Shown: positions 32,401 through 50,257, counted from the stretch's first letter. The stretch is DNA of 64,000 bases from Perna viridis (GCA_037379345.1 CM074514.1:46624001-46688000), one strand, 5' to 3'. Notes: generated from the sequence alone by a model not told the origin. Numbers and translations are program-made.

Positions 32401-32975
32401 TTAGCTAAGTCGAAATTACGACATACTATGCCGAAATAACAATATAGCTATGTAGAAATAACGACATAATATGTCAAAATAACGACATAGCTAAGTCGAA
32501 ATTACGACGTAGTTAAGTCGAAATTACAACATGATATTTTGCTATTACGAATTAATCGCGGGCAGGACTGTCGCGGGATTTCCGGAAAAGGAAGCAATGG
32601 CGACCGGTGGAAAGAAGAAAGGTATGTAAATGATATTTCGATATTTTTACGCGTTATTATGCCATTGCAGAATATTCATGTATGTATTATAATGATTATA
32701 GCATATCTCTAGATGATACTACTTATATCTTTATGTTATAAAATGTAGATTAGTTCGTTACCATACAGAGCATTTTTTATCCCCCAGTCGTTCTCTGAAA
32801 AACTACATTTCATGAAATTAGTCTGTGGCATGCGTTTATTTTCAACAAATTACATAACACATTGCTTTAAATGAGTTTTATTTGAAAGAAGCGTTTAGTA
32901 ATTGATAAAAACGTGCATAGATGTGGAGATATAATGTATTTGTGTAAGTATGGAACTTTCATATACTCTTAAACC
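32401..32975 (+). mobile_element. Truncated inverted copy of the IS3EU right (HECT-side) end, including duplicate micro-exon ATGGCGACCGGTGGAAAGAAGAAAG|gtatgt at 32598
   Basis: Near-identical to the reverse complement of ~47153-47740. The match stops exactly at the first base of the left TIR. Confidence 0.9.
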
Positions 32976-33011
32976 TACGGAAGCCGATTAAGGCCACTTA
33001 AATAATATATC

Positions 33012-33292
33012 ATGTCGCAATTACGACATCCTATGTCGATATTACGATATAACTATGTCGAAATTATGATATAAGTATGTCGAAATTACGATATAGTTAT
33101 GTCGAAATAACGATTTAACCATGTATGCCGAAATTACGATATAGTTATGTCGAAATAACGATTTAACCATGTATGCCGAAATTACGATATAGTTATGTTA
33201 AAATTAGACTTACATTGTCGAAATCACGACATCGGATTTCGAAATTGCAATACAGCTATGTCAAATTTACGATATGACCGTGTCGTAAATTC
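33012..33292 (+). repeat. Left subterminal array of ~21-23 bp quasi-palindromic units (TATGTCG-AAATTA-CGACATA type)
   Basis: Tandem units start about 35 bp inside the left TIR and include a ~49-bp higher-order duplication. Confidence 0.9.
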
Positions 33293-33347
33293 AACAGAAA
33301 GTTACAGCAATGATGTCATATCCGATTTGACTTCCGCCATCTCGATA

Positions 33348-35411
33348 ATAGCCGACGGTAAGTCCCAATATTTAATGTTAAAAGTTTTATTGCAAAGCGA
33401 TAAACTTAAAGAACGTTTAATAAGAAGCATGATTATTCACCAAGAGAAGAGAAAGACTTTGATGCTACTTATTTAATCGCAAAATACCAACTCACAACTA
33501 AACAAATGGCACATTGGTGGGATGATGCTAACAACTTTTATACATACACATCATTAAAAAAATATCAAGATATGGTTAGGATAATTGCGTGGGATATAGA
33601 AAAATTCAGTAAATAGTATCCAACTATGTAACCACAGAAGTATAAAATCATTTCGTTGAATTTCAGAAATGTAATGTACAGAAGTAGAGTATTTTTTTAT
33701 TCTACAATTGTGCGATGAACATTTTGTAATTCTGATTTATTGTCTCTTTTTATTTCTTTGTATAGCTGTGAACAGGGAACAGATATGCAAGTTTTATTTT
33801 AGACTTGGTTTTGAATACAAAACCATTTTAAGATTGCTTTTAGAAGTTCATGAAATCTTTATTAGTATGAGAACACTAAAAAGAAATCTAAAGAGGGCAA
33901 CTTTAAGTCGTAGAAAATCAAATACTGATGTTTTGCAAGCAGCACTTTTCATCCAGGATAAAGTTCAATTATCAGGAGGACACCAAGGTTATCGATGGAT
34001 GCATCTTCAATGTATTCAGAGTGGCATTGATATATCTAGAGATACCGTGCAATTGATGATGCAGATAATTGATCCTACTGGAATTGAAGCTCGGCTAAGA
34101 AAACGGCTAAGAAGACGGCAATATTTTGCAAGGGGACCCGACTTTCTCTGGCATCTCGATTCTTACGACAAGTTAAAAAGATATGGACTGTGCATTAACG
34201 GCTGTATCGATGGGTTCTCCAGGCAGGTAATTTGGTTACACGCTTAAACAACCAGCAGTAATCCACGAGTAGTTGCAGGCTACTATATGGAAGCATTTGA
34301 TTCCAGAAAAGGGTGCCCAAACCATGTGCGAGGCGACCTAGGCACAGAAAACGGACATGTAGCAGAAATGCACAATTTTTTGAGAGAGGAAAAATCATTG
34401 ATTTATGGCAGAAATACGGCAAATCAAAGAATGAAATATTCTGGAATATTTTGAGAAAACAATGTTGCCAGATTTGGATTGATAAATTAGGAGCCTTAGC
34501 AGATGAGGGTCTTTTTGACTTTGGAATTCTAGACAGAAATATATTACAGTTTTGCTGCTTGTCCCTTCTTCTGGTGAGCTAACTTTCAAATTTTTTTTTA
34601 GTTTGGCAACAGGTAACTAGCAAAGCATATGAGTAACGAATATTTCTTGTTTTGTACAAAATTAATATGTTTATTTCGTCCTATTTTGCAAGCGAAATTT
34701 TCATGATTAAACAGGAAAATGGAGACTTATTTTCGCCGCCAGAGCAAATACGTAAAAGTTAATGCTCAGAATAGGATTAGAATAAGTATAGGTCTAGGGG
34801 TTGGAATTAATATAAGAGTATGTAAGAGAGGGTTAATGGTCAAAGTGCAAGCTTCTTTCGGTATTTGATAAGGAACCAAATGATAATAGATTGAATATGA
34901 CTCGTCCAATAATAGTATTTGATACCATTTGCAAGGTTGAATAGGGTTTTTTGTTACTTTTGCCTTTTTATTTGTCTTTCACTTAGCCATTTAATATTGA
35001 CAGTTCGAAGTAAAGTTAGAGCATCATTTTGGACAGTAGATGTACATTCATATGTGTATTTAATAAATGTTAATTTAACATTACAGGCAGATTTGGACAA
35101 TACAATGACCACATGGAACACACATCGCATTCGCCCTACCAAAAATCAAAATTGTCCTCACGGACGTCCAATGGTCATGTACATGCTTCCTGTCTCCTGT
35201 GGGACTCGATGGTATCTATTTGAAGTTGAACAAGCTAAAATAGATATCTGTAAAACATTGCATTTTTCGCGAACAGAGATTTTGTGATGAAGATATCTTA
35301 GAGCTCTGCCTTATTTACATGGAAGAGAACAACTGGACTTTGCCAGCAACAATCGACGAAGCCTTACTTCTGTACTCAAACCTTAGGAATTGCTTTCTAC
35401 ATGACTTGTAA
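33348..35411 (+). pseudogene. IS3EU DDE transposase (integrase-core type), 3 exons, disabled
   Basis: Exons are 33348-33357 (ATA GCC GAC G|gtaagt, probable ATG->ATA), 33766-34573 and 35087-35411. Catalytic-type motifs are WHLDSYDKLKRYGLCINGCIDGFSR, RGDLGTEN, NQR(I)E and WNTHRIR. There is a premature TAA at 34245-34247 and frameshifts near 34431 and 35255. Confidence 0.9.
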
Positions 35412-35499
35412 TCAATGCAATTATAAAAGATTATTTGATGATCTGATATATATGCCGTTTTGTTCTCATCTTAGGTCAAATTGCTTCCTTTTATTCTCT

Positions 35500-36770
35500 A
35501 TGCATAGTGTAACGAAAATGGGATGCCAAAAGTCTGCTTCCGCCGTCTGTCCGTCATTCACACTTTCTTCTTAACACATGGTTTTAGAGACCTTGTTCAA
35601 ATTAATTTTGCGCGATTGTTAGTAATACTAGATTTGATCGCAGCTTCAATTTAATTGTGGGGGTAATAATAGGACTTTACTCTTCGTTACAAAATCAGTC
35701 AATCTGATTTCAATTATGCCATTGGCATTTTAAATTTTATGAAAAGCAAAAGATGTCAAATAAAGCTAGATTTGTTGAATTTATACGACCGGAGAAAACA
35801 ATCGGTCCTATTACGCAAAGAGGAGGTTGTCGTCCTTGTAGTTGGTTTTTTCCATGCGATAACTTTATATGTAGTTAACTAAATGAAATTTTGATATATT
35901 GTTTATTGCTTCTAGCGGTAGCTGTCTATTTTATTGGTCACTGCCCCCTACCGTTCTACATTTGCAAAAAGGGGGGACAAAAGGGGTAAATTAGGTCTTT
36001 ATTTAAAATGATGTAGAAGGTTTAATTTGTATTCAATTTTAACGATTCTTTTTTAGTACGTTTCTTATAAAATTCTGTGTTGTGAGTTTTGACAAATTTA
36101 AAATACCGTTTGACATTTTAGTCTACAGGAGGCCTGAATGGAGCCACACCCTAAAAATCACTTTCTTCATTTTCGGTAATTTTTTAGGGTATCCTGCACA
36201 AAATGGCCGTTTGGATTTTGATCCGTTAAAATCATGTCCCCGTTACTAAAAACATACATATGGGTCAGAGAGCAGTTGTTTTACATGTATCTAAAAAACC
36301 GTTAAGTTCAATCAACCTCTGACGGAGTAAAAGTGTTCAACGTGAGTTCTATCTGTGGTCTAATTGTAGTGAAAATATGTTGACCCATGTTGGAATTATC
36401 TTTTTTGGACGTTTTTCTTTGCTGTTTTTTTTATGTTATTACTTTCAAAAATCTTCTCCTCAGAAACAACTTCCAAGACTTCAATGAAAGTATGTATGAT
36501 TGTTTCTTAGGGTATCTTGCACAAAATGACAGTTTGGATTTTTGAGTTGTGAAAATACATGGCCGCTGTTACTTCGAATAGCACATAGGGGTCAAAATAC
36601 ATATTTTTTTGCAAATAACCCAAAAACAAATGAATTATGCAAAATTCTGATGGAGGGTAATATTGTTCACCTTCAGAACACGGGCCGAACATGGCCGTCG
36701 TAACGAAGAACTGAACATAGGGGTCAAAATCCTTTTTTTGACATTTTTTTTCTTCGTGCAACTGTAGAAG
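35500..36770. mobile_element. Cluster of Helentron-like non-autonomous repeat fragments
   Basis: Three degenerate catggccg..gttact..aa...cataggggtcaaa units and a ccgtctgtccgtc microsatellite. Boundaries are approximate. Confidence 0.5.
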
Positions 36771-36828
36771 AATAATAAAGATGAAAGCTACTGATGAAAA
36801 CTATATTCTGAGTTAACAGGCAGTATTG

Positions 36829-38172
36829 AAAGAGTAATCAAAAGAACCAAAGTTATAGCGGTAATCAACAGAATGTAATCCAGAGACAAATACCAGACAT
36901 GGAAAACAGACACACACCACAAAGAACATAAAGTAACTAAAATCATACATACAAAGTAACAAAAGCAAATGAGCAACTCGCAGGTGATGTAGGGATGTTG
37001 CCACAGATGAAAGGAAAGTTGACAATTCTGAATGAAAAGTCACCAGGTTTGTTGTAGAGTTTGGTCAATAGTTTTCCTTTACCATCAATTTCCAAGTGTA
37101 GGTCAAGATATGAGGCTGACCTCACAGTGTCTGTAGTATCCTTTATTTCAAGTTCTTTGGGGTAGATGCGATGTATCAAATCCCCGAAATTAGGATTGTT
37201 TAAAGATAATACGTCATCTATATATCGGAAACTGAGATTAAAGGATCTAGCTAAACGATAGTCTTCCTTTCGTATCGGATCAGCTATAAAGTCAGTCACA
37301 TAAGAGTAAAGAAATAGGTCAGCAAGTAGAGAAGCATAATTTGTTCCCATTGGAATGCCCACCGTTTGTTGAAAAACGCGTCCACCACACTGGACAAATA
37401 TGTTGTCGATTAAAAATTACAGCATTTGTAAATATTTTCTTCTGCATATTTGGAAGATGATTTAGAATTATTTTTCATAAAGTATGAGGAATCTCAACCA
37501 AGAACCATATATTTGTATCTAGGTGTACCATCTTTTTTGGAAAAACATCGATGTATAATGTTTTTAGTAGGGATTTTAAATTAGTATGGGGAATAGAAGT
37601 ATACAGTGTTGAAAAATAATAGATTTTAAAGCTGTTATATTCTGATAATAGTCTTGAACTGATTGTCTCTAAAAGATCTTCCGATTTTTTCAGGATCCAC
37701 ATTAAATTGATAAGATACGGGAGTAACAAGTGTTCTGGTAGGACTGCAGACCCTCTTTGACAGTTGCAGAGTATAGAAGTTAAATACTGATGTAGCATTG
37801 GCACTCATTGGCCTACTTAAAACTTTTATTCGTTTCACAATTAAAGATTTAGACCTCACGGCCTTAAACCACTCTGACAGTGTTCTAATCAGTATCTTCA
37901 CGTTCTCGTTTTATCCATTTTCTTGTGTAGTCCTCCACGGCATCCATAAAAACTTTAAAAAGTTCTGATTCCAATTTAGGGACCGTGGGTCACGGTACTT
38001 GGGACCTTTAGAAAGGATATTACGCAGAATCGTTTTCGATGATGGCTAAATCTCCCGGAACGACGTGACTCAAAGGACCATATTTGAATGGAGAGTTTTT
38101 GCAAGAACAGTCAGGTGTTTTACCCTTGAAGTCCTCAATCTCGAGGTTCAACAATAGCCTTTTATAATTGAA
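36829..38172 (-). mobile_element. Penelope-like retroelement (probably Naiad-type) RT fragment with 3' tail, nested between the two IS3EU genes
   Basis: CSCKNSPFKY...KGPKYR, FSTLYTSIPH, GIPMGTNYASLLADLFLYSY, FRYIDDVLSLNN and SASYLDL motifs, with an internal deletion before the tail. Clade assignment is from memory of the family. Confidence 0.85.
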
Positions 38173-38495
38173 ATCACTTCAAAAATGCGGTGGTGTCAAA
38201 ATATTTTGGCGAGAACACAACCCTCTCACTGTAAAATCTAATCACTGTGGAAAAATGTTACACAAATAAACGAACTTAAATCAGTTCAAAAACGCCAGAA
38301 TCCCTTGTTAAAACAGTTTCATCTCTTTATACGGGAAACAAACGTACAAGAAAAGGACTACTAGCAGTTAACTAACATGCTAGCTCCAGACCAGTTTAAA
38401 CCCGCAAAGAGTCATACCCTCACCGTATGTAATATCAATCCCAATTCTTCCAATGCGGGTGGTGAATCACGGTACATCTTCAGTCCATACATAGG

Positions 38496-38648
38496 AGCTC
38501 ATTTACTGGTGTTACTTTGTATGTATTATTTTTGTCACATCATCTTCTTTGTTGTGTTTCTCTGTTTTCCATTCCTTGTCTTTGTCCTTGGATTACATTC
38601 TTTTGATTTCCGCTAGAATCTTGGTTGCCTTGCAATTGATTACTCTTT
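38496..38648 (+). mobile_element. Penelope-like 3' tail fragment
   Basis: gctcatttact...ggattacattcttttgatttccgctag block. Confidence 0.7.
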
Positions 38649-38946
38649 TTTGAAATTTAAAACTCTGTTAGAAATACGAGCAAATCTAACTAATTGTGAT
38701 ATGTAAACACCATATAATATATAACAGGATGGTTAGAACTGGACGTCACCATCTAAAAACGGTAGTTGACAAAAGATGGTACAGAAAATAAACAGTAAAC
38801 ACAGAAATATGCCTTGCCTGTTACACATGTTCAGTCGGATATGACTGCGGTCATATACATATAAAAGCCATAAATGGAGAACAACATAATCCTAATGCAC
38901 GCCTATTATCATCGTCCTAGAAGGACTAACAGATAATGTAAATTTG

Positions 38947-38947
<1 letters not shown>

Positions 38948-38980
<33 letters not shown>

Positions 38981-39032
38981 AGGACTGACGAACAAAACTG
39001 GCATACCCCGAACTTCAGTTTAGGGGTATAAA
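38948..39032 (+). repeat. (GACA)n microsatellite followed by atacccc...ggggtat hairpin (Helentron-like end)
   Basis: Visible directly. Same end structure as in 42240-43170. Confidence 0.65.
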
Positions 39033-42000
39033 AACTGTTTTCTGCACCCTTAGGCCTCCTTGGAATGGGAAATGCCTTTAAATGCACTTTTAAACTCAAA
39101 ACTATTTTCAATTGCTGCGGTCGCCCATGACTCATTGGGTAAAGTGAGGTAAATGTAAGTTCAAAGTTGTTACATGTCAGACAAATATACAGAAAAGGTG
39201 AATGCATTATACAACCACAATTGATTGTTTTGAGTACAATAAAAATAACATTTAAATGCAACGATGTCTTTATTGATAACCGGGTGTTCTCGGCAAATAA
39301 AATTAAACAAGATGTCGAACCCTACATCATGCTAAGAATACCCCCACTCAACAATTTCAGTCAAAGCTGGGAAATGAACACAATACAGATTATCATAAGA
39401 AACAGATATATACATGTATGTACCTCATTTGCCATTTAGATTCAGCTACTGGACTCAATACAAAATTTATACATGTTAACAAGATTGAAATTAAGCAATG
39501 TCTTTATTGCAAATCAAATGTACAATCTGATATATATTTATGTATTGACGGAAGTCTTATCTGGTCTGCCGATACTTCATTGCTATTTAGTTTTAGCTTT
39601 AAGACTCGGTGTAAAATTCATACATGTTTACAAGTTCATAATTGACATTATTGCAACAATGTCTTTATTGCAAATTAAATGTATTCTTTATCGATAAATG
39701 AAGTAAAATAAAACAACAAATAAAAAAAGTGAAATTAGAGTTCATACTAAATAAATCAAACATTCAACAAGATCACAAGGTCTTTTCAAACATCTCATTT
39801 GCTATTTAGCTTAAGCCCAAACTACTGTAAGGTTTATTTAAATCTATGAAAATCCTCAATTCTGATTTTAAAGAAGAATAATTCTTGTAAGGAGATCATA
39901 TTTGTAGATAATGTTGAGCTGAGTTCAATTTTGTCAAGTAAAGTTTTCTCTTACACTTGGATTTTTTTTTGTGATAAAGGAAATACTGTGACAAATTATC
40001 AATTACGATATTAAAATGGAAATACACTCATAAAACTAGTTAGCTTAGAAAAGAGTTGTATAAAAATACAGCAATATCTTCATCGCTAATAACATGTATT
40101 CTCACTTAACAACATGATGATGAACACCAAGTGATGATATGTTTACACAATGTCCATCACCCAAAAGTTCTCGCTTAGGATGTTGTCAAATTCTGAACGG
40201 AAATTCATAATGTTTTCATATATTTTGGATAACATTAGTATACATCCGCATGTGTGAGCTATTGGCCTCCTTTGTAGACCCTGCATAACTGCAAATTCCA
40301 CTTTAATACACCTACTTATTAATAGATCTGAACCAGTACAAAACCTTAAGAATTTTTTCAATGTTCCATCATCTAAGTTCTTCACATATTTCTTCAGGTA
40401 ATTAGATACTTCTGATGATTGTGCATCCATTGGATCTGGAAACTGAAGGATCTGTACTACCTTTTTATTGGTTGGTTCCAACTGTCCATAAATACCATTT
40501 AGATCAATTGATTTTAATCTTATGTAGTTATTAGCAAAAACATCCTTCCAACAATCTATCACAAACCTTGGTGATTGTAATATCTCTTTGTGGGATATTT
40601 CTTGCAGAATAACTTTAAAAGTGTCATTTTTTGGAATTTTCTTGCACTCATGACTGTCCAATGCCTCAATTAAATCATCTATGTCTATTTCTGAAAAGTT
40701 TGAACATGCTTTAACAAAAATTTATTTGTCTGGTACAGATACAAAATTATAAAAGTTATTCATAAGCTCTTCCTTCTAAAGATTTTCATGACCCAAAAGA
40801 CATTGTGACAGAAATGTTTTTGATATCTGAATAGGCCAGTACCCAGTTTTTCTGAACCCATATACCAATATACGTGCAACTGATTTCCATTTTTCTTCAC
40901 CAAAGTCGTGGCGTAGTGTTGGAACTTTAACTGTTCTCCCAAGAGTACAGGTCTCGTAAAACAACTGCCAAAACTCACTTAATAAGTCTCCTAATACATC
41001 ACCTGAATCTTCTGCCTTTTCAGTTTCTCCATTTGGTAGAACTCTTGTAATTGATAGAGAATCGTCACATATTGCTGGATCTTTGAAATATCCAATCATC
41101 TCTATCAAGGACATTGATACACGATGAATTTGAATACTAGGAAGAGGAGTTGCTGCTTCATATGGCAAAGTACTGTCACTGTCATTTACAACTCCTTCAT
41201 TTTCAAGGGCACCATCCAAATTAAAAACTATCTCAGGATCTACTTCTGTGACAGATTCTCTATTTACTGTTTCAGAATCAAAAATATATTCCGGTAAAGT
41301 TGGTGGAACATTAACTTCATAGAGTATACAATTTGCAGTTTCACTTGTTCCACTGCAAGAAATATTAGGATCTGGTAGAGTCATCATCTGATAAATCTAC
41401 TCTCTTTGATTGACCTTTATACACTGATTTCTCTTTGTTAAAATCTTTCGCAGTTTTGATGTTGTGGCCAAATAAAATCTCAGAATATTAACACCAGTTT
41501 TTTCATACCATTCTTCAATGGAGTCATCACCTTCTATTACATCCTCTGAAAAGTCACAAAGTTGGAATTCAAACTGGTCAGAAGATCCTAGTTTGCTTTT
41601 CCCTTCAGGGAAAAAATGGCTTTAGCTTTTGCAACTATTTTTTTCTCTTTTTAAAGCATTTGGGAAGGTCAAACTTTCTTCTGCTGCAACGATTTTTCTT
41701 TTTTACTTGCTTGAACGTTGTATTACTTACATCAAAATTAATCCAACCAATTTCAACTTTCCTAGTTTGCTTTAAAGCATTTCTGTTTCCAAAGAGATGG
41801 GACCTTTTAGTAGGCTCTTCTTCCTCTTCTGAATCACTCTTGTTTTTTCTGTATGTTGAGTTTTCGTCTCAAAGTTTTCATGAAAGAAGATTTCTTTTCT
41901 TGTGCTGACCCCTTCAGCCCTCTCTCACAGAATTTTTCAAAACAAATTTGTCTCCAGCTAAAGGAATAAACTCCTTCAAAGAACCATCAGGAATAGTTTG

Positions 42001-42239
42001 AAGTATATGCTGATCAATCTACAAGAAAACAACATTTATTTGTATCATTTTCAGCTAATTAATTCATAACATGAACTTGACAGCATCAAATTCATGATAA
42101 GTATAGGTAAGCCCAGGATTTTGTGTATAAAAAATAAATAGATCAGTTCAAAACAACAGCCAATATACTTGCTCATTACTGACATAGTACAGAAAGAATT
42201 ATATTATGGGCCTACTCACAAACGATAACCCCTGCATGC

Positions 42240-43170
42240 CTCATGCAACAAAAGGTTGTTGCTTTGTTCAAATTGAACATTAATTTCCAAGGAGGAGTTG
42301 TGCTTATGAGGCCATCTTTTAATTTTGAATATCTAAAATGTCAGAGTTGAATTACCTCCCCTAAATAATATCAGAGAATAATTATTTTCCTTCATGCACA
42401 TCAGTATATGATGTCCTTCCTTCGTATTAAGTTTCATCAAATTTCATGCAGTGGTTAAAGAGGAGTTGCGCTTACGAGAAATGTGGACAGACAGACAGAT
42501 ATACAGGGCAATATCTATATATCTCCCCATAATGACTGAAAAAGTCGAACTACATGTACATCTCCCTTCAATGACGTTCGAGCTCAATTATTTTTCTTCA
42601 TGCACATCTCCATATGGTGTCCTTCGTTTGTGTACAGTATAATAAAATCTGTGCAGTGGTTTTAGAGGAGTTGCGCTAACAAAAAATGTGGAGAGACAGA
42701 TGGACATATAGGGTGATTTATATATACCCCAAAAGTTTTCAGGGGTATAAAGAGACATACCGTGGCTGTTCACTGTGCATTGGGAACAAAAGATTGAGTG
42801 GATACTAATACAGTTTCATTTTCTGCATTCAGAATGGAAGACCATTTATGTTTTTTTAGCATTATGCAAAAAAAAAAAGTTTGAATGTATCTTTTGAAAT
42901 GTGAGGGTTTCAAAATTAGTAGTGTGATTACCACTACCACAGGAAAAAGGTTTGTCAGAAGGGCATTTTACCTCTGGGATCAACTTGTCCTTAACATATT
43001 AGACTAGACATATTGTGAGCCCGTAAGTGATATGTGAGAATAATTATTTAAAGTTTCATCAAAATCCAAGAAGGGGTTTTCAGAAGGAACTGCCCTTATG
43101 GCAATCTTTTCAATGGACAGACAGGGTGATTCATATATACCCCCAAAATTTGTTTGCTGGGGGTATAACT
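42240..43170 (+). mobile_element. Two Helentron/HINE-like non-autonomous elements in intron 2 of the HECT gene
   Basis: aagtttcat..aatt...agaggagttgcgct core repeats, (GACA)n tracts, and terminal hairpins tatacccc...ggggtata at ~42723-42748 and ~43136-43167. Confidence 0.6.
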
Positions 43171-44671
43171 AGTCATGGGAAAACATATATTGATCTATTT
43201 CTAGCACATTGCCCCTGCCAGTAATGTTTATAACCATTTGAAGCTTAATAAAATTTAAGAAAGCAAGGGTAAAAACCATGAATACATGTATTACTTTAAT
43301 ACTGAAGTGGATGTAATTTTTTGGTAGATAAACCATGATTTTCATATAGCTTATGATATGATAGTGGGAGCAATTAATTACTGGTGGTGGGCATAGAGGG
43401 AGAAAAGTGATGAATTTTGAGAAGAGGGGCAGGAAAGGGAGAAGAGGAGTAGAGGAAGAAGGGTGAAAGGGCCCAACTGTTCACCCCTCATTACTATGGT
43501 ACTTCATTTGCACTTACCAACTTATTATCATTCAAGACTTTAATTTGGTCATCAGTATAGCCTCTTAACTTTAAGAAGGAAATAATTTCTTTCTCTATAT
43601 CCATATCTGGACTCCCTGTTAAATGTAAAGAAACAAATAATTTTTTGTATTCAATAATGTAAAAAACAAGAGGCTCACAAAAGCCTGAATTGCTTACGGC
43701 AAACAATGCCCTATAAACTAAGCAACAAAGCAAGGCTTAAGCCATTTACAAAATTTTCATAATCCTCATTTAACTTAAAATACCATGTTGCCGGTGTAAA
43801 CCAAATATTGTTGAAATCCAAACAAGCGTAAAAATTTCCCTAAAAAATTGCAATTTTTTTTCATTAAAATGGTCATCCAGAACATATTTGTTGTCATCAC
43901 CATTCAATTCCGGATACTATGGTTCCTCTGAAAACCAAAGATCGTTAAAATTAGCAAATGTAAATATCGGGGGGGGGAGGGTGCTAACCTTACCACAATA
44001 CAACTTAGAGTATCATGTTTTACCTTTAGCTTTTCGGTCATTATTCTGCATTTTTTAAACGCGACGTTTATATTTGGACTTACTGCCCTCACCCATTCTT
44101 ATTCGAGAAGCAATTTTTCTCAAAGCAAAAAAAAACATATTCATTTCATAGAATTTAGCAATCGTAATGTCTTTATATGATGTCTAAAAAATCCAAAGGA
44201 TAAACTTTTATTAATTTGTGCCATTTCTATTTTTTTTAATAAAGAAACTCGTTTATTTTGCGAAAATAAGTCATAGGGTCCTTTCTTGTGATCTTGAACT
44301 TAATGATATTCTAGACAAAAACAATAAAGACAGTTACGATTCTTTATCAAAAACATTTGGGTGGAGTGGAGCATGTTTATGAATAAAGCGGCTTTCAATT
44401 TGTGATGTGGTGATGCCTATGGAACTGCATTCTAAATATCATAGACCTATCATATACGTTGTTCATGTTCAACTGATGTAAGCAGAAAAACCATTAAATT
44501 TTAAAAGTCGGTTGATCATGACTGTTGGGGATTTATGCATAATACGGCTTTGAATTTGTGATCAAGTGATGCTAATGCAACTATATACCAAGTATCATTG
44601 ACCTAGCATAAGGGGTTCATGTTTAAATTAACTTATATCAGGCACTTGATTCTACGATTTTTTTCCATTAG

Positions 44672-44751
44672 CGGTGGCGGATCCAGAGAGGGACCAATGT
44701 TTGGCCCTGTTTAGTGGGCCCCTCTTATGAAAATTTCTGGATCCGCCACTG
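44672..44751. mobile_element. 80-bp MITE with C(A/G)GTGGCGGATCCAG TIRs
   Basis: 15-bp TIR with 1 mismatch. attag is repeated on both flanks. Confidence 0.75.
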
Positions 44752-45975
44752 ATTAGTACTTATATATAAAGTAATATAAGTACTAATGGGAAAAATAAAA
44801 CGCCAGGATATGAAATAAAGAGAAAAGCTACGACAAAAATACATTTCATTTTGTAGGTCTTGTCGATATGTACCAGATTTACAAGGGGTTAATAGTGTCA
44901 AGGAAAAGAAACGCCCAATAAAATTGAATGTGGTTCACTATCCTCAAGTTGTGGACATTTAGCCGAGTTTTACGTCCCAAAGTTTCACTTCAATAATTAC
45001 CCCACAAATCATGAGTAAATATGACCTATTTTAATGAAATAAAGCTTGTTAAACTCCTAACTGTTTCGTACATAAGAAGTTCTAATTTGGAATCATAACT
45101 TAACTCTTTTGTAGTTTTCGAACTATTCCGGTTTAAATCATTTATTCAATAAATCTTACAAGGCCTCCTCTCATAATGGGATACATGAAATGGTCACCCC
45201 CTTTCAATGTTTTATAAAACTAGAAGTTGTGTCTATGAGCCAAGCACGTGGAGCCAAGCATGCCTCCGATCGTTTTAATCAAGTCGCTCTAGCAGAAAAT
45301 GTAGGTCAAGGTGACCTAATTCATAATAATCCTGTTGTACTACGAGTAACCGAGATCTATCTACTGATCAAGTATGGAGGCCAGAATATATATTTCCAAA
45401 TTTGCCGGGCCATAATGATTTTTTTTTTATTAAAAAGCTACGCCGAGTGTAGCATGATACAACAGAGAACATTGAGGGACCTATATGAACAGTAATTTGC
45501 CTTGACACATGAAGCGAATTGTGGATTGTCTACGCATCTTTGTCACATGTAGTACATACTGCATTCTTTGAAAAAAACATTGCATGATTTTTTTCCCAAA
45601 TCAGACAAAGAATCAAAAATTAAACTTTTGGTCATACATGTTTCCCAACTCTGGCCTCTATAAGGTGGCATTACAACGATTTAAGATACATCAAATCCGT
45701 TGCCATATTACTGAAAGCCGTGGATTAAAGCTACATTTAGAGAAGAAATCATTAAATTCCAATGAAAAATGAAAATTCGGCCCTTTTGACCCTTAATTAC
45801 TCGGAAACCATAAGAACTATCAAAAATCTAATTAAAAACCAAGGCAGAGATTTTATTGAGGAACATAATGTTTTTTTTTTCAAAATCTTACCAGAAATAA
45901 AAAAAATATGTATATTTTTTTGGCCGTTGCCCAACTTTGCTGTGTGATATTCTATCTACTATTTATTCCCCAGTA

Positions 45976-47094
45976 ACACTGTCACGTTTCGCCAGCTAGG
46001 TTTTAGTACGTTTTAATTTGCTACGTTTATTTAATTTTTTGTCATTTATCAGTCATTTATAAGGGACAATAATTATTATACTGTTAAGCTGTTAAACACT
46101 TTTTCACATTTATCTACGAATTTTTACGCTATGTTACGGACGATTCAGGTTTTTGTGTTAGGTTTCAAAACGTTTTGTCACGTACATGTACATTTTACTC
46201 CGTTTCGCTAGGATTCAGTACGTTTGAACTACGGTGAGGTGCGTTTCAAATACGTTTTAGTACGATATGATACGCTTTAAAGTTTTGTACGTAGATTCTA
46301 CGTACTATCACGTGTAACCGTGTTTAAACTTACAAATATCGCTTGAAACGTCATACATAACTTAATCTTTTTGGTGAAATACTCATAAATCAGCAAAACA
46401 AAAGCTCAAGTAACTAATTTTCAAATTTGCTTTATAACATAATTGTTCATAATTACATTCCTCAGATTTACATGGTTATTCTGTTATTATTCCGAGACCT
46501 ATATTGACCAATCAGTAAAGATGAAGCACAAAATCAATCTTTCTATTCAATCTTTGTTTATGCAAACAGAACCGAAATTGGCAAACCGTGCTCTTCTAGT
46601 TCACAATATTTTCTAAGTATTGCAGATTTATGCAACCAATGTTGAAAATTCTGTCAAACGTGGATTTTTACTTAGTAACAATGTCGTCAGTGGTAAATGT
46701 GAAGGAAAACGCACGACAAGCGCAATAATACCTCTGTATAGTAAAGCCTAAAATATGTATCTTCTAACATAACATAACTTAACAAAACCTAACAGAACGT
46801 GCTCAAATGCATTCATACCTTTGGATTTCTGTTGTATTAGGCATTAATACGCTTTTAGTACGCATTGATACATTTGCGATACCCTTTTCTAAGTTTTAGT
46901 ACGTTTAAATTTTCGTACCGTTTGTTTTGTGCAGACCAATACAAACCGGACTGGTCACGTATCAATCTACGTATAGTTACGTATATCGCCGTTTTAAGTA
47001 CGCGTTGATTCCATTTGATACATCTATTACCGTTTCACTATATTTATATGGAAACGTAGTTAAACGAGATAGCCAAAACGTGACAGTGTGAGCT
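45976..47094. mobile_element. ~1.1-kb non-autonomous DNA element in intron 1 of the HECT gene
   Basis: 14-bp TIR acactgtcacgttt / aaacgtgacagtgt, with recurrent ttttagtacg-type motifs near both ends. The right end is followed by TTAA. Confidence 0.6.
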
Positions 47095-47589
47095 TTAATC
47101 TAGTACAGGTCTTTAAATCACACACTTATTGTCGGTGACATTGATTTTTTAGGGTTTTTAGGGTATATGAAATGTCCATACTTACCCAAATACATTATAT
47201 CTTCACATCTATGCACGTTTTTTATCAATAACTAAACGCTTCTTCCAAATAAAACTCATTTAAAGCAATGTGTAATTCGTTGAAAATAAACGCATGCGAC
47301 AGACTAATTTCATGAAATGTAGTTTTTCGGAGAACAACTGGGGAATAAAAAATGCTCTGTATGGTAACGAACTAGTCTACATTTTACAACATAAAGATAT
47401 AAGTAGTATCATCTAGAGATATGCTATAGACATTATGATACATACATGAATATTCTGCAATGGCATAATAATGCGTAAAATATCGAAATATCATTTACAT
47501 ACCTTCCTTCTTTCCACCGGTCGCCATTGCTTCGTTTTCCGGAAATCCCGCGACAGTCCTGCGCGATTAATTCGTAATATCAAAATATT

Positions 47590-48058
47590 ATCTTGTATTT
47601 TCGACTTAACTACGTCGTAATTTCGACTTAGCTATGTCATTATTTCGACATATTATGTCGTAATTTCTACATAGCTATATTGTTATTTCGACATAGTATG
47701 TCGTAATTTCTACATAGTATGTCGTAATTTCGACTTAGCTTTGTCGTAATTTCGACATAGTATGTCGTAATTTCGATTTAGCTATATCGTTATTTCGACA
47801 TATTATGTCGTAATTTCGACTTAGCTATGTCGTTATTTCGACATATTATGTCGTAATTTCTACATAGCTATATTGTTATTTCGACATAGTATGTCGTAAT
47901 TGCTACATAGTATGTCGTAATTTCGACTTAGCTATGTCGTAATTTCGATTTAGCTATATCGTTATTTCGACATATTATGTCGTAATTTCGACATAGCTAT
48001 GTTGTAATTTCGACATAGTATGTCGTAATTTCGACTTAGCTATGTCGTAATTTCGACT
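47590..48058 (-). repeat. Right subterminal array of the same ~21-bp unit, roughly 20 copies, inverted relative to the left array
   Basis: (tatgtcgtaatttcgacatag/ttagc)n directly inside the right TIR. Confidence 0.92.
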
Positions 48059-50257
48059 CTTTATTTTTTTTCAAATGACCCTAACCGGCTTCCGTAATAT
48101 TGCAATGCAGTCGATGGAAAAAAAACCTCTCATGGCATAAAAAGAAAAGTGCATGATAATAATGAAAGAAAACAGAGATTATCAAAATGTTGATTTATAA
48201 TGAAATTAATCACGTAGTCTTTGAATCAGTTGATGTAGTTACATTTTTATTATCTTAAATGGACAAAATGTTGAGTCTTTAAAACGGATGCCTTGACTTC
48301 ATAGTTTTGTATCCAGGAAAACAGTTTCAGTTTTTAAATCTTTTAACTAAATGGGTCCAGAATTTTTGGGTATTAGCATAAGCAGGTTTTCGATCGACTA
48401 GACAAAATAATAAAAAAAAACTTGTATGTGACAAAAAGGTGAAATCGAATACATGCGACGAAAGCCTTTTATCATTTATTTGATGTAGATCTAAAAGAAA
48501 ATTTTTAAAAATGTTCAATTTCATACAGAAGATATATTTGAGGCAATACTAAAAGTTTTGTGAAAAAACATCATCGAACGATAAATGCTAAATAAACAAT
48601 GTATACATGTATATTTCTGTTATTTCCTGTCTACTGTCTTGATTGACCTGATCATATGACACTTTTAAATGTATGAAGATGCATGACCATATCGGGAACT
48701 AGTTTATTACTAATATGTGTGTCCTGTTCAAAAAGGACAATATTATTGGAAACTCGATATTTATTGTATTCCGAAGACAAAATGTTAAAAGTTAAGCTCC
48801 CGTTGCGATATTCCCTGGATAAAAATCGTACTTAACCATATTCTTATCAATTTTTCATTTTTGCCCACTCTAGTAAGTATTAAATGTATTACAATCGCAC
48901 TTCAGAAAACAAATTGGAGAAAGGTTATTATTTATTAATGTATAATCCTTAAACTTAAACAATTAACACTATTTTATTATTTTGTTTGTAAAACAAACAT
49001 CGGAATAAATTTCACCAATTACATGAAAAATGCATCAATATATACTTCATATCCAAAAATGTATTTACATATGCGGAAACGATTTCTTTTTTTCTTATTT
49101 TATTACAGATTTAATTGCATTTATATTTTTTCATGAACAAATTTGGTGGAAACATTCCATTGGAATATTTTTGAGCATTTTTAATTGGTTTAATCAGAAG
49201 TCAATATCATGGATATTACTCAGTGAGGCTGGTGATTGAGTGAGTGAAAAATTGTTTTCCCATAATTAAGCCGTGACGAGAAAAGAGTAATTTATAAAGG
49301 GTAGAATTTCTTAAAAGGTAGCGATATATGGGATTGAAATGGCTTAGCCTGCTGCCTAATCCCCTTCATTATCAAATACGTTGTACTTAAAGAGTTCATC
49401 TCATACTTGCATAAGTTCCTTTGCCTTTACTTTATAACATTTGCTTTCTTTCTTTCACTTAATTTAACAAAAAACAACATCAAGAAGGCAGATTCATTGT
49501 ATTGAATCATAAACACGTATGCTTAAAACGGAAGTTATGGGAAAGCCAAGTAAAGATAACACTGTATCACAAAATGAAAGGAATACTTAAGTGAATGAAT
49601 ATACATTACTTCAAGTTAGTTTAATAAGTCAACGTTTTCTACGTTCCTCCGCTGTCGGTAGTTGTTTACAGTCTATGCGACTAATTGCATGATTGTTTCA
49701 ACATTGATTGAACATATAGTGTTTTGCTAGTATCACTAAATCAGGAATTCGATTTATGATATAATTATTTTAGCATCGATCCACTCGGAAGAACAATGTA
49801 ATTTTTTAGCTGGGTTTTACGAAAAAATTATTGATATTGCTGATCACAGAACACAACGTACAAGCTTTAACATACAAATATATTTAAAGAATGTTACATG
49901 AAATTCCTAAGTTTGGTAGCAATAATTCTAAATTATTAAGCAGCATGTTGAAAACTGTCCATAACCTTCATAGACTTAGAGAAATGCATAGATTGTATAC
50001 AATTTTTTCTTCAAGGAAAATGTTCCTAAACCATTATATCCACAATATTGTAGCCCCCAAATTGAATATTGCCATAGATCTCATAGACAGCGTTAATCAG
50101 CAATGACGACTCCGACAAAAGCAAAATTAACGATAGATAAAAAATGTTAATCAAACTTGCTGGTGATTCATGTCACAAGTTAAATTATGTTATTTTACGA
50201 GTGTAAAATTCGAAAAAAAAATCATCTTATATGTAAAACCATGTGACACATACATAC

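What the first reader, a model, noticed from the sequence alone, without database searches (positions are those of the whole stretch)
32976..48096. Two-gene IS3EU-type transposon carrying its own SAM-like/HECT E3 ubiquitin ligase
Seen: TACGG TIRs enclose a DDE transposase (+) and a convergent multi-exon gene (-) ending in FLRFCTGS...RPIAHTC. The cargo start codon and first exon sit about 60 bp inside the right subterminal array, and both genes carry stops and frameshifts. Established: the PxAHTC cysteine is the HECT thioester-forming residue, and TAY..RTA ends with an IS3-like transposase define IS3EU. Inference: the ligase is an integral second gene of the element rather than a bystander host gene. 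It could act as an anti-silencing or host-factor degradation module, or control transposase turnover. I know of no functional characterisation, but cannot exclude that repeat libraries already annotate this ORF.
Basis: partly seen in the sequence, partly recalled or inferred. Interest (0 to 1): 0.9.

Follow-up and report, generated by a model that had tools for sequence, protein, structure and literature searches.

The report
Transposon carrying its own ubiquitin ligase
This is a dead copy of a cut-and-paste DNA transposon (IS3EU type) that, like relatives in corals, sea anemones, molluscs and fishes, carries a HECT-type ubiquitin-ligase gene next to its transposase gene, a pairing I could not find described in any paper.

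Summary
TACGG...CCGTA ends, 22-bp subterminal arrays, an rva_4 integrase-core transposase (+) and a convergent HECT gene (-) are all present, and both genes are broken.

Corrections:
- In this family, 32976 is an inner terminus.
- Every copy carries an inverted partial right arm outside it (window 32395-32973). One copy has a perfect 6-bp target duplication around the outer ends. The window copy has lost its outer-left tip.
- The exon next to the right array is a spliced 5' leader whose ATG is out of frame. The conserved start codon is at 43604.

- About 12 of about 17 HECT-like loci in this genome have a convergent transposase within 3.5-20 kb.
- The same pair lies inside perfect TACGG inverted repeats with target duplications in Pecten, Actinostola and Porites, and inside long inverted repeats in Oryzias and Sardina.
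- The ligase has a ubiquitin-like domain, a disordered linker and a full HECT fold with an invariant catalytic cysteine.
- A 2.7-kb transposase-only relative in Nematostella shows the ligase is not universal.

Its target is unknown. A predicted ligase-transposase contact has only weak support.

This scan reached the same conclusion earlier on another copy in this genome (s1-771670).

The parts
32395..32973 (.). Outer-left arm. This is an inverted partial copy of the right arm (equivalent to 47156-48057). Its terminal TACGG tip (about 45 bp or more) is lost in this copy.
   Evidence: One search gives inverted repeats I1, I2, I9, I17 and I24 at 91-97% identity. Searches show the same arm in the copies on C1, C2, C8, C12 and C9. 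Searches show that the outer terminus is intact in C1, C8, C12 and C9c, and that C1 has the target duplication CCTTAC/CCTTAC around the outer ends.
32597..32621 (+). Mirror copy of the leader exon (ATGGCGACCGG...) with a GT donor, pointing towards the transposase gene.
   Evidence: Read directly from the sequence. It maps through inverted repeat I9. Its use in transcripts was not tested.
32976..32999 (+). Inner left terminus, TACGGAAGCCGATTAAGGCCACTT. It matches the right terminus at 20 of 24 positions.
   Evidence: The junction ...CTCTTAAACC|TACGG is identical in the window, C2, C12 and C9c.
33005..33291 (.). Left subterminal array of about 13 units of roughly 22 bp (ATGTCGAAATTACGATATAG-like). 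These are presumed transposase-binding sites.
   Evidence: Tandem Repeats Finder. The binding role is inference.
33708..35396 (+). Remnant of the transposase gene (DDE integrase core, Pfam rva_4). It has an in-frame stop at 34245-34247 and later frame breaks.
   Evidence: The fragments are 45-56% identical to the transposases of the paired elements in other species.
36800..38650 (-). Nested fragment of a very high-copy retroelement (RT-like ORF 36943-37362), flanked by a 130-nt inverted repeat at 36845-36974 and 38497-38626. It is present in all family copies and is not part of the transposon's design.
   Evidence: One search returned 37,651 first-look candidates in the genome.
40146..42018 (-). 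Main exon of the ligase gene. It encodes the end of the N-terminal helical part, a ubiquitin-like domain, an acidic disordered linker and a full HECT domain. The catalytic Cys codon is at 40248-40250 and the stop codon at 40143-40145. The exon carries 7 in-frame stops and one frameshift near 41615.
   Evidence: Searches give the coordinates and the breaks. Searches cover the HECT fold and the invariant Cys. Searches cover the ubiquitin-like fold.
43518..43614 (-). First coding exon. The ATG is at 43604 and it encodes MDIEKEIISFLKLRGYTDDQIKVLNDNKL. It has an AG acceptor and a GTAAGT donor.
   Evidence: One search shows the joint 42018|43518 in contigs of two runs. One search shows that the peptide matches the N-termini of intact homologues (MDELCDFLRSRNV...). 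One search shows the same two-exon plan in four species.
44831..44900 (-). 3' end of a further upstream (5'UTR) exon, spliced to 43614. Only the 44831 boundary is supported; the upper limit is nominal.
   Evidence: joint 43614|44831 with CT..AC ends, in a single contig.
47503..47532 (-). 5' leader exon about 45 bp inside the right array. Its ATG (47527) is out of frame with the ligase ORF, so it is 5'UTR or a short upstream ORF.
   Evidence: joint 42018|47503 with GT..AG on the minus strand, in a 1533-nt contig.
47572..48057 (.). Right subterminal array: 11.3 copies of a 43-bp unit, each made of two units of roughly 22 bp.
48073..48096 (-). Right terminus (reverse complement TACGGAAGCCGGTTAGGGTCATTT).

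Best explanation
The stretch is a decayed, left-truncated copy (about 15.7 kb, 32395-48096) of a two-gene DNA transposon of the IS3EU/GingerRoot kind.

Shown:
- The element has TACGG...CCGTA tips, subterminal 22-bp repeat arrays and long inverted arms.
- It carries a DDE integrase-core (rva_4) transposase gene and a convergent gene for a protein of about 650-700 aa.
- That protein consists of a short helical N-terminus, a ubiquitin-like beta-grasp domain, a disordered acidic linker and a complete HECT domain whose catalytic cysteine is invariant across the family.
- The gene pair is inherited together inside the inverted repeats in Cnidaria, Mollusca and teleosts.
- The family makes 6-bp target duplications.
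- In this genome's family, the mobile unit ends at an outer inverted copy of the right arm, not at 32976.
- Related copies are transcribed from the ligase strand and spliced from a leader exon in the terminal arm.

Inferred:
- The transposase binds the arrays and performs cut-and-paste.
- The ligase is an active E3 that takes ubiquitin from a host E2 (about 0.6).
- It works for the element at the transposition complex, docking on the transposase through its N-terminal module. It would then ubiquitinate the transposase or neighbouring host proteins, for example to clear the stable integrase-like strand-transfer complex so that the gaps can be repaired (about 0.3).

The ligase is an accessory of one clade and not a universal requirement.
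For: Anatomy.

Family copies and the composite left end. The copy on C1 has the target duplication CCTTAC/CCTTAC at its outer ends.

Pairing within the genome.

Pairing in other species:
- Pecten: 30/30 inverted repeat, target duplication TATATCC.
- Actinostola: 30/30 inverted repeat, target duplication GTTCTC, intact 388-aa transposase matching rva_4 at E 8e-39.
- Porites: 30/30 inverted repeat, target duplication GAGACA.
- Oryzias: 995-bp inverted repeats. Sardina: 575-bp inverted repeats.
- Pinctada and a further assembly.

Ligase family:
- 1309 cluster representatives at E <= 1e-3.
- The named members are all called 'uncharacterized' or 'HECT domain-containing'.
- The catalytic Cys is invariant in 48 sequences.
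- Foldseek matches HUWE1, UBR5, NEDD4 and E6AP at E 7e-12 to 1e-8 over roughly 350-400 alignment columns.
- The ubiquitin-like fold scores Z 9.1-7.3, and all 50 top rows are beta-grasp domains.

Co-divergence: Mantel r 0.87, permutation p 0.001. Both gene trees recover the same supported nodes.

Splicing and strand.

Predicted contact between the Actinostola transposase and ligase residues 1-200: ipSAE 0.45 against a best control of 0.06, runs agreeing in at least 42% of contacts, partner pLDDT at least 71. The tool's verdict was 'weak support'. That mark was reached by 51 of 78 solved complexes and 2 of 108 mismatched pairs, but scores of 0.60 or under are more often wrong than right.

Diagnostic IS3EU features (TA..TA or TAYGG..CCRTA ends, 6-bp target duplications): PMC10045372, PMC12730594.
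Against: - No ligase activity, target or requirement for transposition has been tested.
- A Nematostella element of 2.7 kb has a perfect 30-bp TACGG inverted repeat, the target duplication GTATTC and an intact 393-aa transposase, but no ligase gene.
- This genome has more than 150 transposase matches against about 17 ligase loci. The ligase is therefore dispensable for at least some relatives, or is supplied in trans.
- The co-divergence signal rests mainly on two lineages; r falls to 0.29 (not significant) without them.
- The complex prediction is only weak.
- Pfam HECT scores sit barely above the cutoff.
- No intact copy exists in this genome, and all RNA reads are under 99% identical to the window copy.
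- I could not consult Repbase or Dfam, where the second ORF may already be recorded.
Confidence: 0.85

Rival explanations
1. The ligase is an integral element gene but acts on host factors independently of the transposase. For example, it could mark silencing or restriction proteins for degradation, as some viral E3 ligases do.
For: Conservation and the invariant Cys fit any enzymatic role. The ubiquitin-like domain and long disordered linker could equally be a host-protein docking module. Fungal IS3EU elements carry presumed anti-silencing TET/JBP genes (PMC12730594). The comparison with viral ligases rests on my own knowledge.
Against: No host target is indicated by any result. The only interaction test run gave weak support for a contact with the transposase instead.
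Confidence: 0.3
2. The ligase gene is a passenger with no role in transposition. It would have been captured once and kept by hitch-hiking, or it is catalytically dead and merely structural.
For: A transposase-only relative in Nematostella shows signs of recent mobility. Transposase loci far outnumber ligase loci in this genome.
Against: The pairing persists across Cnidaria, Mollusca and fishes at 30-45% protein identity. Open reading frames are intact in several species, and the Cys, the AHTC motif and many fold-core residues are invariant. Neutral cargo would have decayed.
Confidence: 0.1
3. The mobile unit is exactly 32976-48096, and the inverted arm at 32395-32973 is just a neighbouring fragment.
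For: The inner TACGG terminus has its own array and matches the right tip at 20 of 24 positions.
Against: The arm abuts the inner terminus at the identical junction in all copies on six chromosomes. The target duplication CCTTAC flanks the outer terminus in the C1 copy. There is no duplication at 32976/48096. Fish relatives have 0.6-1 kb inverted arms.
Confidence: 0.07
4. The HECT gene is an ordinary host gene that happens to lie beside a transposase.
For: Two HECT-like loci on C5 have 366-aa open frames with no transposase hit among the listed matches. Some family members may therefore be host or domesticated genes.
Against: The window gene is multi-copy, broken, and enclosed with the transposase by inverted repeats. 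The same holds in other phyla.
Confidence: 0.01

Closest known systems
[quoted passage not shown] 2019, PMC6839031; Kojima & Bao 2023, PMC10045372)
   Same: It has an integrase-core DDE transposase, TA..TA (TACGG..CCGTA) tips, 6-bp target duplications and long inverted arms with internal repeats. It occurs in fishes, corals, sea anemones and oysters.
   Different: The papers I could read describe only the transposase in animal and plant elements. None mentions a HECT or any ubiquitin-system gene. PMC11934779 states that IS3EU structure and function are largely unexplored.
Fungal TET-positive IS3EU families (Kojima 2025, PMC12730594)
   Same: They have TAYGG..CCRTA ends, inverted repeats longer than 30 bp and 6-bp target duplications. 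A second gene lies in the opposite orientation to the transposase, so multi-gene IS3EU elements exist.
   Different: There the extra genes are an alpha-kinase and a TET/JBP dioxygenase. Here the extra gene is a ubiquitin-like plus HECT ligase, and Pfam finds nothing else in it.
Cellular HECT E3 ligases (HUWE1, NEDD4 family, UBR5, E6AP)
   Same: It has the bilobed HECT fold and the P-x-AHTC catalytic loop about 35 residues from the C-terminus.
   Different: It is very divergent: 11-17% identity, with Pfam scores just above the cutoff. The HECT domain is compact (about 330 aa), the N-terminal architecture differs, the family is multi-copy, and the gene is encoded inside a transposon.
Other ubiquitin-system enzymes carried by transposons: ULP1-like proteases in Mutator-like and CACTA elements, OTU-like proteases in Helitrons (my own knowledge, not checked here)
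   Same: A mobile element brings an enzyme of the ubiquitin or ubiquitin-like pathway as an accessory gene.
   Different: Those enzymes are deconjugating proteases. This one is a conjugating E3 ligase.
Viral E3 ligases and ligase hijackers (herpesvirus ICP0; papillomavirus E6 with E6AP) (my own knowledge)
   Same: A genetic parasite uses ubiquitination, possibly to remove host defences or to manage its own proteins.
   Different: There is no sequence relationship, and this is a DNA transposon and not a virus. The function here is unproven.

Membership tests
IS3EU/GingerRoot DNA transposons | DDE transposase of the IS3/IS481-like integrase-core type | tested here: met
   The window exon matches rva_4 at E 3.6e-10. 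The intact Actinostola relative matches rva_4 at E 8.1e-39, with D (WHIDGYDK), D (ADYGTEN) and E (NQRIEAWW) readable in the ORF. Its N-terminus gives only a weak HTH_32 hit and no zinc-finger family.
IS3EU/GingerRoot DNA transposons | Termini TA..TA, typically TAYGG..CCRTA | tested here: met
   TACGG/CCGTA in the window, in the family copies, and in Pecten, Actinostola, Porites and Nematostella.
IS3EU/GingerRoot DNA transposons | 6-bp target-site duplication | tested here: met
   Met for the family and its relatives: C1 copy CCTTAC, Actinostola GTTCTC, Porites GAGACA and Nematostella GTATTC. Pecten shows 7 matching bases, TATATCC. Not visible in the window copy itself, because its outer-left tip is lost.
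IS3EU/GingerRoot DNA transposons | Transposase groups with Repbase IS3EU / GingerRoot sequences in a tree | not testable with these tools
HECT-type E3 ubiquitin ligases | Bilobed HECT fold (N-lobe plus C-lobe) | tested here: met
   In the AF2 model of the closest full-length relative, residues 330-660 have pLDDT mostly above 90. Foldseek gives probability 1.0 to HUWE1, UBR5, NEDD4, SMURF2 and E6AP over 366-401 columns.
HECT-type E3 ubiquitin ligases | Catalytic cysteine in the C-lobe about 35 residues from the C-terminus | tested here: met
   It is invariant in 48 family members, with the flanking H and T at 90% or more. The window codon TGC lies at 40248-40250, 34 residues before the end.
HECT-type E3 ubiquitin ligases | Sequence-profile match above the curated threshold | tested here: met
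   Pfam PF00632 scores 25.5 bits against a cutoff of 23.9 for the window exon and 24.9-36.9 bits for full-length relatives. This is marginal. One relative falls below the cutoff at 23.2 and another at 21.3.
HECT-type E3 ubiquitin ligases | Forms a ubiquitin thioester and transfers ubiquitin | not testable with these tools
   This needs a biochemical assay.
   There was no SAM hit in Pfam at E <= 1 for 8 intact relatives. A family-profile search of PDB at E <= 10 also found none. The models lack the first coding exon and show only two helices there. The residue pattern (FL..RG....I..L....ID...L..M.D.DL..YLP..GDR) is only reminiscent of SAM.
Ubiquitin-like (beta-grasp) domains | beta-beta-alpha-beta-beta beta-grasp fold | tested here: met
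   VIA-align gives Z 9.1 (polycomb ULD, rmsd 2.6 over 80 residues), 8.8 (USP11 UBL) and 8.4 (Ring1B RAWUL), and all 50 top rows are beta-grasp domains. Foldseek matches the SATB1 ULD at 3e-4 and the GABARAP/LC3 family. Z values within 1 of each other are ties, so no subfamily is assigned.
Fungal multi-gene IS3EU (alpha-kinase / TET-JBP carriers) | The second gene is an alpha-kinase and/or a TET/JBP dioxygenase | tested here: not met
   Pfam finds only HECT in the second gene. The convergent arrangement is shared (PMC12730594).

The most novel reading that the evidence does not exclude
A clade of metazoan IS3EU transposons encodes the first known transposon-borne E3 ubiquitin ligase. This ligase is an active partner of transposition. 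It docks on its own integrase-like transposase through the N-terminal helical and ubiquitin-like module. It then ubiquitinates the transposase or adjacent chromatin or repair proteins, clearing the strand-transfer complex or locally defeating host silencing. Both genes would be driven by mirror-image promoters and leader exons built into the long terminal arms.
Probability: 0.25. Interest if true: 0.9.

Novelty: new variant of a known kind. Interest (0 to 1): 0.7.

Why it matters
DNA transposons are usually thought of as a transposase plus its binding sites. Known accessory genes are mostly DNA-binding proteins, nucleases, proteases or, in fungi, demethylases.

A ubiquitin ligase conserved inside one transposon lineage from corals to fishes would be a new kind of accessory function. 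It would give a tractable system for two questions. The first is how integrase-like transposases are removed after integration. The second is how mobile elements manipulate host proteostasis or silencing.

It also has a practical consequence. Hundreds of 'uncharacterized HECT domain-containing proteins' in mollusc, cnidarian, fish and amphibian annotations are probably transposon genes and not host ligases. That matters for gene-family counts and for reports of gene-family 'expansion'.

The window copy itself is a dead relic. The value lies in the family.

Tried and rejected
- An inverted-repeat search with TAYGG ends in the divergent own-genome pairs (C3a, C10, C3c, C2b, C13) found no clean ends. 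These copies are too decayed, or the fetched span was too short. C3b turned out to be an inverted duplication with a nested 4.3-kb element.
- SAM-like domain: no Pfam or PDB sequence support.
- The atlas search of the N-terminal part gave only unnamed clusters.
- I tried to fetch own-genome transposase loci that lack a ligase hit (C1:52.58 Mb, C13:1.25 Mb, C4:9.67 Mb and others) to see what they carry.
- No DNA was available for the closest homologue's contig or the Bombina locus. The Montipora transposase is not on record. The Haliotis locus shows no transposase within 10 kb.
- Co-phylogeny: the Mantel signal is real but is carried by two lineages, so it is only modest evidence.
- Complex prediction gave 'weak support' only. 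I use it as a hint and not as evidence of binding.
- Literature: there are no papers with IS3EU plus HECT. Searches for HECT plus transposase plus terminal inverted repeats, for 'HECT domain' plus 'DNA transposon', and for G2E3 plus transposon found nothing relevant. The Kojima 2019 review is not held.
- The leader-exon ATG as start codon was rejected on reading frame.
Exons were searched by reference one at a time. In one search, translated fragments (stops as X) were concatenated only to compute distances.

Full report
**What is in the window**

The motif TACGGAAGCCGNTTA occurs exactly twice in the 64 kb: at 32976 on the plus strand, and ending at 48096 on the minus strand. About 0.18 matches are expected by chance. 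Inside each end lies an array of roughly 22-bp units, at 33005-33291 and at 47572-48057 (43-bp double units, 11 copies).

ORF 33708-34247 (+) matches the Pfam integrase-core family rva_4 (E 3.6e-10). ORF 40143-40661 (-) ends ...FLRFCTGSD...RRPIAHTCGC... and matches Pfam HECT over the C-lobe (25.5 bits, cutoff 23.9). The two genes converge. The region has about 33% G+C and lies in a 723-Mb eukaryotic genome.

**State of the two genes**

The closest full-length relative found (P0001, 662 aa) aligns almost collinearly to 42018-40146 on the minus strand. That main exon carries seven in-frame stops, three of them at 41397, 40776 and 40722, plus a 1-nt frameshift near 41615. The catalytic Cys codon TGC is at 40248-40250.

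The transposase frame has a stop at 34245-34247 and more stops downstream. The region of the catalytic E (NQRIEAWW in intact relatives) is disrupted. No copy in this genome has an intact ligase frame.

**Gene model**

The single read-laying run gave three canonical GT..AG joints on the minus strand in transcript contigs:
- 42018|43518, seen in two runs;
- 43614|44831;
- 42018|47503, seen in a 1533-nt contig.

Raw stranded RNA reads lay with the first mate on the plus strand over 41650-45032. This fits minus-strand RNA if the library is of the usual stranded kind. None of the raw RNA reads (run X21) is 99% or more identical to the window. They therefore come from sister copies or from another individual.

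Exon 43518-43614 encodes MDIEKEIISFLKLRGYTDDQIKVLNDNKL. This matches the N-termini of intact homologues, and it splices in phase 0 to ...IDQHIL.... The annotated homologues in Pecten, Sardina, Haliotis and Oryzias all have the same plan: a first coding exon of 22-28 aa, one intron, then one large exon.

The exon at 47503-47527, next to the right array, is therefore a 5' leader. Its ATG runs into TGA after either splice.

**The real ends of the element**

Whole-genome searches with both ends show the same inverted arm abutting the inner TACGG in the copies on C1, C2, C8, C12 and C9. It always starts at the same base (query position 57-58). The junction sequence is identical.

Copies are 88-95% identical to the window along their whole length. 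In C1, C8, C12 and one C9 copy the outer arm ends in its own TACGGAAGCCGGTTAGGG tip.

In C1 the outer-left tip and the right tip are flanked by the same hexamer, CCTTAC. C8 shows ATTTAG against ATT-AG.

The family therefore moved as outer arm plus inner element, with inverted arms of roughly 0.6-0.9 kb.

Medaka and sardine relatives have 995-bp and 575-bp inverted arms with internal 21-bp arrays. Long arms are thus normal in this clade.

The outer-left arm carries a mirror copy of the leader exon with its GT donor, at 32597-32621 (+), pointing at the transposase. Whether it is used was not tested.

**Is the ligase part of the element?**

Within this genome, the C-terminal ligase exon has 22 matches and the transposase exon more than 150.

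Six further loci of the same family (79-92% identity) are convergent pairs 6-7 kb apart. Five more pairs belong to much more divergent families:
- C3:7.37/7.39 Mb
- C10:25.73 Mb
- C3:12.74/12.75 Mb
- C3:9.15/9.16 Mb
- C2:59.40 Mb

In these, the ligase is 27-46% identical and the transposase 34-63%. That makes about 12 of about 17 ligase loci paired. The chance of a transposase hit within 25 kb of a random point is below 1% by arithmetic.

Outside this genome the ligase family is large: 1309 cluster representatives at E <= 1e-3, with full-length members of about 600-780 aa. The databases name them only 'uncharacterized' or 'HECT domain-containing'. They occur in Haliotis, Mytilus, Pinctada, Pecten, Gigantopelta, several teleosts, Bombina and Actinostola.

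Loci reached from the ligase side:

| Species | Arrangement | Ends |
|---|---|---|
| Pecten maximus | Ligase (+) and an annotated rva_4 gene (-) | Perfect 30/30 TACGG inverted repeats; TATATCC on both flanks |
| Actinostola | Ligase (+) and an intact intronless 388-aa transposase (-) | Perfect 30/30 inverted repeats; target duplication GTTCTC |
| Sardina, Oryzias | Convergent pairs | Long inverted arms |
| Pinctada, one further assembly | Convergent pairs | Not fully visible |
| Haliotis | No transposase within 10 kb | n/a |

Loci reached from the transposase side:
- Porites lutea has the pair inside perfect 30/30 inverted repeats, with the target duplication GAGACA.
- Nematostella has a 2.7-kb element with perfect inverted repeats, the target duplication GTATTC and an intact 393-aa transposase, but no ligase.

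Across eight paired loci the pairwise distances of the two genes correlate (Mantel r 0.87, permutation p 0.001). Both trees recover (C3b, Pecten) and its sister Sardina with support. Without the two most distinctive lineages, r drops to 0.29.

Taken together, the ligase is a long-standing, co-inherited gene of one IS3EU clade. It is neither a bystander nor a recent capture. It is also not universal.

**What the protein is**

In an alignment of 48 family members the catalytic Cys is invariant, and the preceding H and T are at 90% or more.

An AF2 model of the closest full-length relative (mean pLDDT 78.6) has three parts: a confident alpha/beta domain at 75-183, a disordered segment at 187-322, and a confident domain at 330-660.

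The last domain matches complete HECT domains (HUWE1, UBR5, NEDD4 family, SMURF2, E6AP) with probability 1.0 over 366-401 columns. The family profile also finds HECT chains in PDB by sequence.

The N-terminal domain was modelled alone from five species (pLDDT about 90 in the core). It is a beta-grasp, ubiquitin-like fold: Z 9.1 to a polycomb ULD, 8.8 to the USP11 UBL, 8.4 to the Ring1B RAWUL, and every one of the top 50 rows is a ubiquitin-like domain. These Z values are ties, so I assign no subfamily.

The first approximately 60 residues are helical. Their pattern recalls SAM domains, but neither Pfam nor a PDB profile search supports this. My models also lack the first coding exon, so the point stays open.

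**How it probably works**

Shown: the anatomy, the co-inheritance, the fold, the invariant catalytic residue, and transcription and splicing of family members.

Inferred from established knowledge of DDE transposons and HECT ligases:
- The transposase binds the subterminal arrays and cuts and pastes the element with 6-bp staggered target cuts.
- The ligase accepts ubiquitin from a host E2 on its cysteine and passes it to a substrate.

A complex prediction between the intact Actinostola transposase and ligase residues 1-200 scored 0.45 against a best control of 0.06. The runs agreed in at least 42% of contacts and the partner pLDDT was at least 71. The tool rates this 'weak support': the mark was reached by 51 of 78 solved complexes and 2 of 108 mismatched pairs, but scores of 0.60 or under are more often wrong than right.

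My preferred reading (about 0.3) is that the ligase is recruited to the transposition complex by the transposase. There it would ubiquitinate the transposase or its neighbours, for instance to clear the stable integrase-like strand-transfer complex. Action on host silencing or restriction factors (about 0.3) is equally open.

The Nematostella one-gene element argues that the ligase is helpful or clade-specific and not strictly required. Alternatively, it can act in trans.

**Comparison with what is known**

The literature gives these diagnostic features for IS3EU/GingerRoot: TA..TA ends, 6-bp duplications and an integrase-like DDE transposase (PMC10045372). It also gives TAYGG..CCRTA ends with inverted repeats longer than 30 bp (PMC12730594). 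All were met here, apart from a tree against Repbase sequences, which I could not build.

Multi-gene IS3EU elements are known in rust and truffle fungi, where a convergent alpha-kinase gene and a TET/JBP gene accompany the transposase (PMC12730594). No paper in the library holds IS3EU together with HECT. The IS3EU and GingerRoot papers I read mention no ubiquitin-system gene. One of them states that IS3EU structure and function are largely unexplored (PMC11934779).

I therefore file this as a new variant of a known kind. The caveat is that Repbase entries may already list the ORF.

**Earlier work in this scan**

This scan's notebook shows that another agent reached the same conclusion on another copy in this genome (s1-771670). 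My tests were run independently and agree with it.

This prevented inspection of this genome's transposase loci that lack a ligase.

Noticed in passing
window 36800-38650: A fragment of a very abundant retroelement sits between the two transposon genes in every family copy, so it was already present in the master copy. It has an RT-like ORF at 36943-37362 (-) and is flanked by a 130-nt inverted repeat. The genome search returned 37,651 first-look candidates at about 85% protein identity.
   Followed up: partly
window 32597-32621 (+): A mirror copy of the ligase leader exon, with its GT donor, lies in the outer-left arm and points at the transposase gene. With an acceptor at 33681/33682 its ATG would be in frame with the transposase ORF. 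That is one chance in three, so it is only a lead. Both genes may be driven from the terminal arms.
   Followed up: no
G000:C9:26595738-26631432 (L007-L010): Two family copies are joined head-to-head within their transposase regions, forming a palindrome of about 35.7 kb bounded by two right ends. The flanks are GATATG and GATAAC (4 of 6 match).
   Followed up: partly
G000:C3:12728000-12757000 (L020-L022): A divergent ligase/transposase locus is embedded in a large inverted duplication. It contains a nested 4.35-kb element with perfect 30-bp TATGGAAACGCATTTGGG... inverted repeats and flanks ATAAAT/ATGAAT.
   Followed up: no
G000:C5:40499470-40500474 and C5:44321197-44322177 (L029, L030): Two HECT-like stretches have 366-aa open frames without stops, at 27-31% identity. 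No transposase hit lies within the 10 kb fetched. They may be host or domesticated relatives of the transposon ligase.
   Followed up: no
L033 7541-18731 (Actinostola): The intact two-gene element is itself inserted in a short TACGG-ended element (29 of 30 inverted-repeat match, 41 bp plus 338 bp remaining). It looks like a non-autonomous IS3EU derivative that served as the insertion target.
   Followed up: no
L038 9489-12203 (Nematostella vectensis): A 2.7-kb one-gene IS3EU element with perfect 30-bp inverted repeats, the target duplication GTATTC and an intact 393-aa transposase lies inside an intron of a histone-fold gene.
   Followed up: partly
P0172 (Bombina bombina, 1060 aa): An annotated protein combines C2H2 zinc fingers with a full-length match to the transposon ligase. 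It is either a fusion or domestication, or an annotation that merges neighbouring genes. No DNA was available to check.
   Followed up: no
window 42289-42615 and 43663-43694: Many RNA reads and contigs break off here into unrelated sequence. This indicates short high-copy repeats inside the ligase gene's intron and first coding exon region.
   Followed up: no
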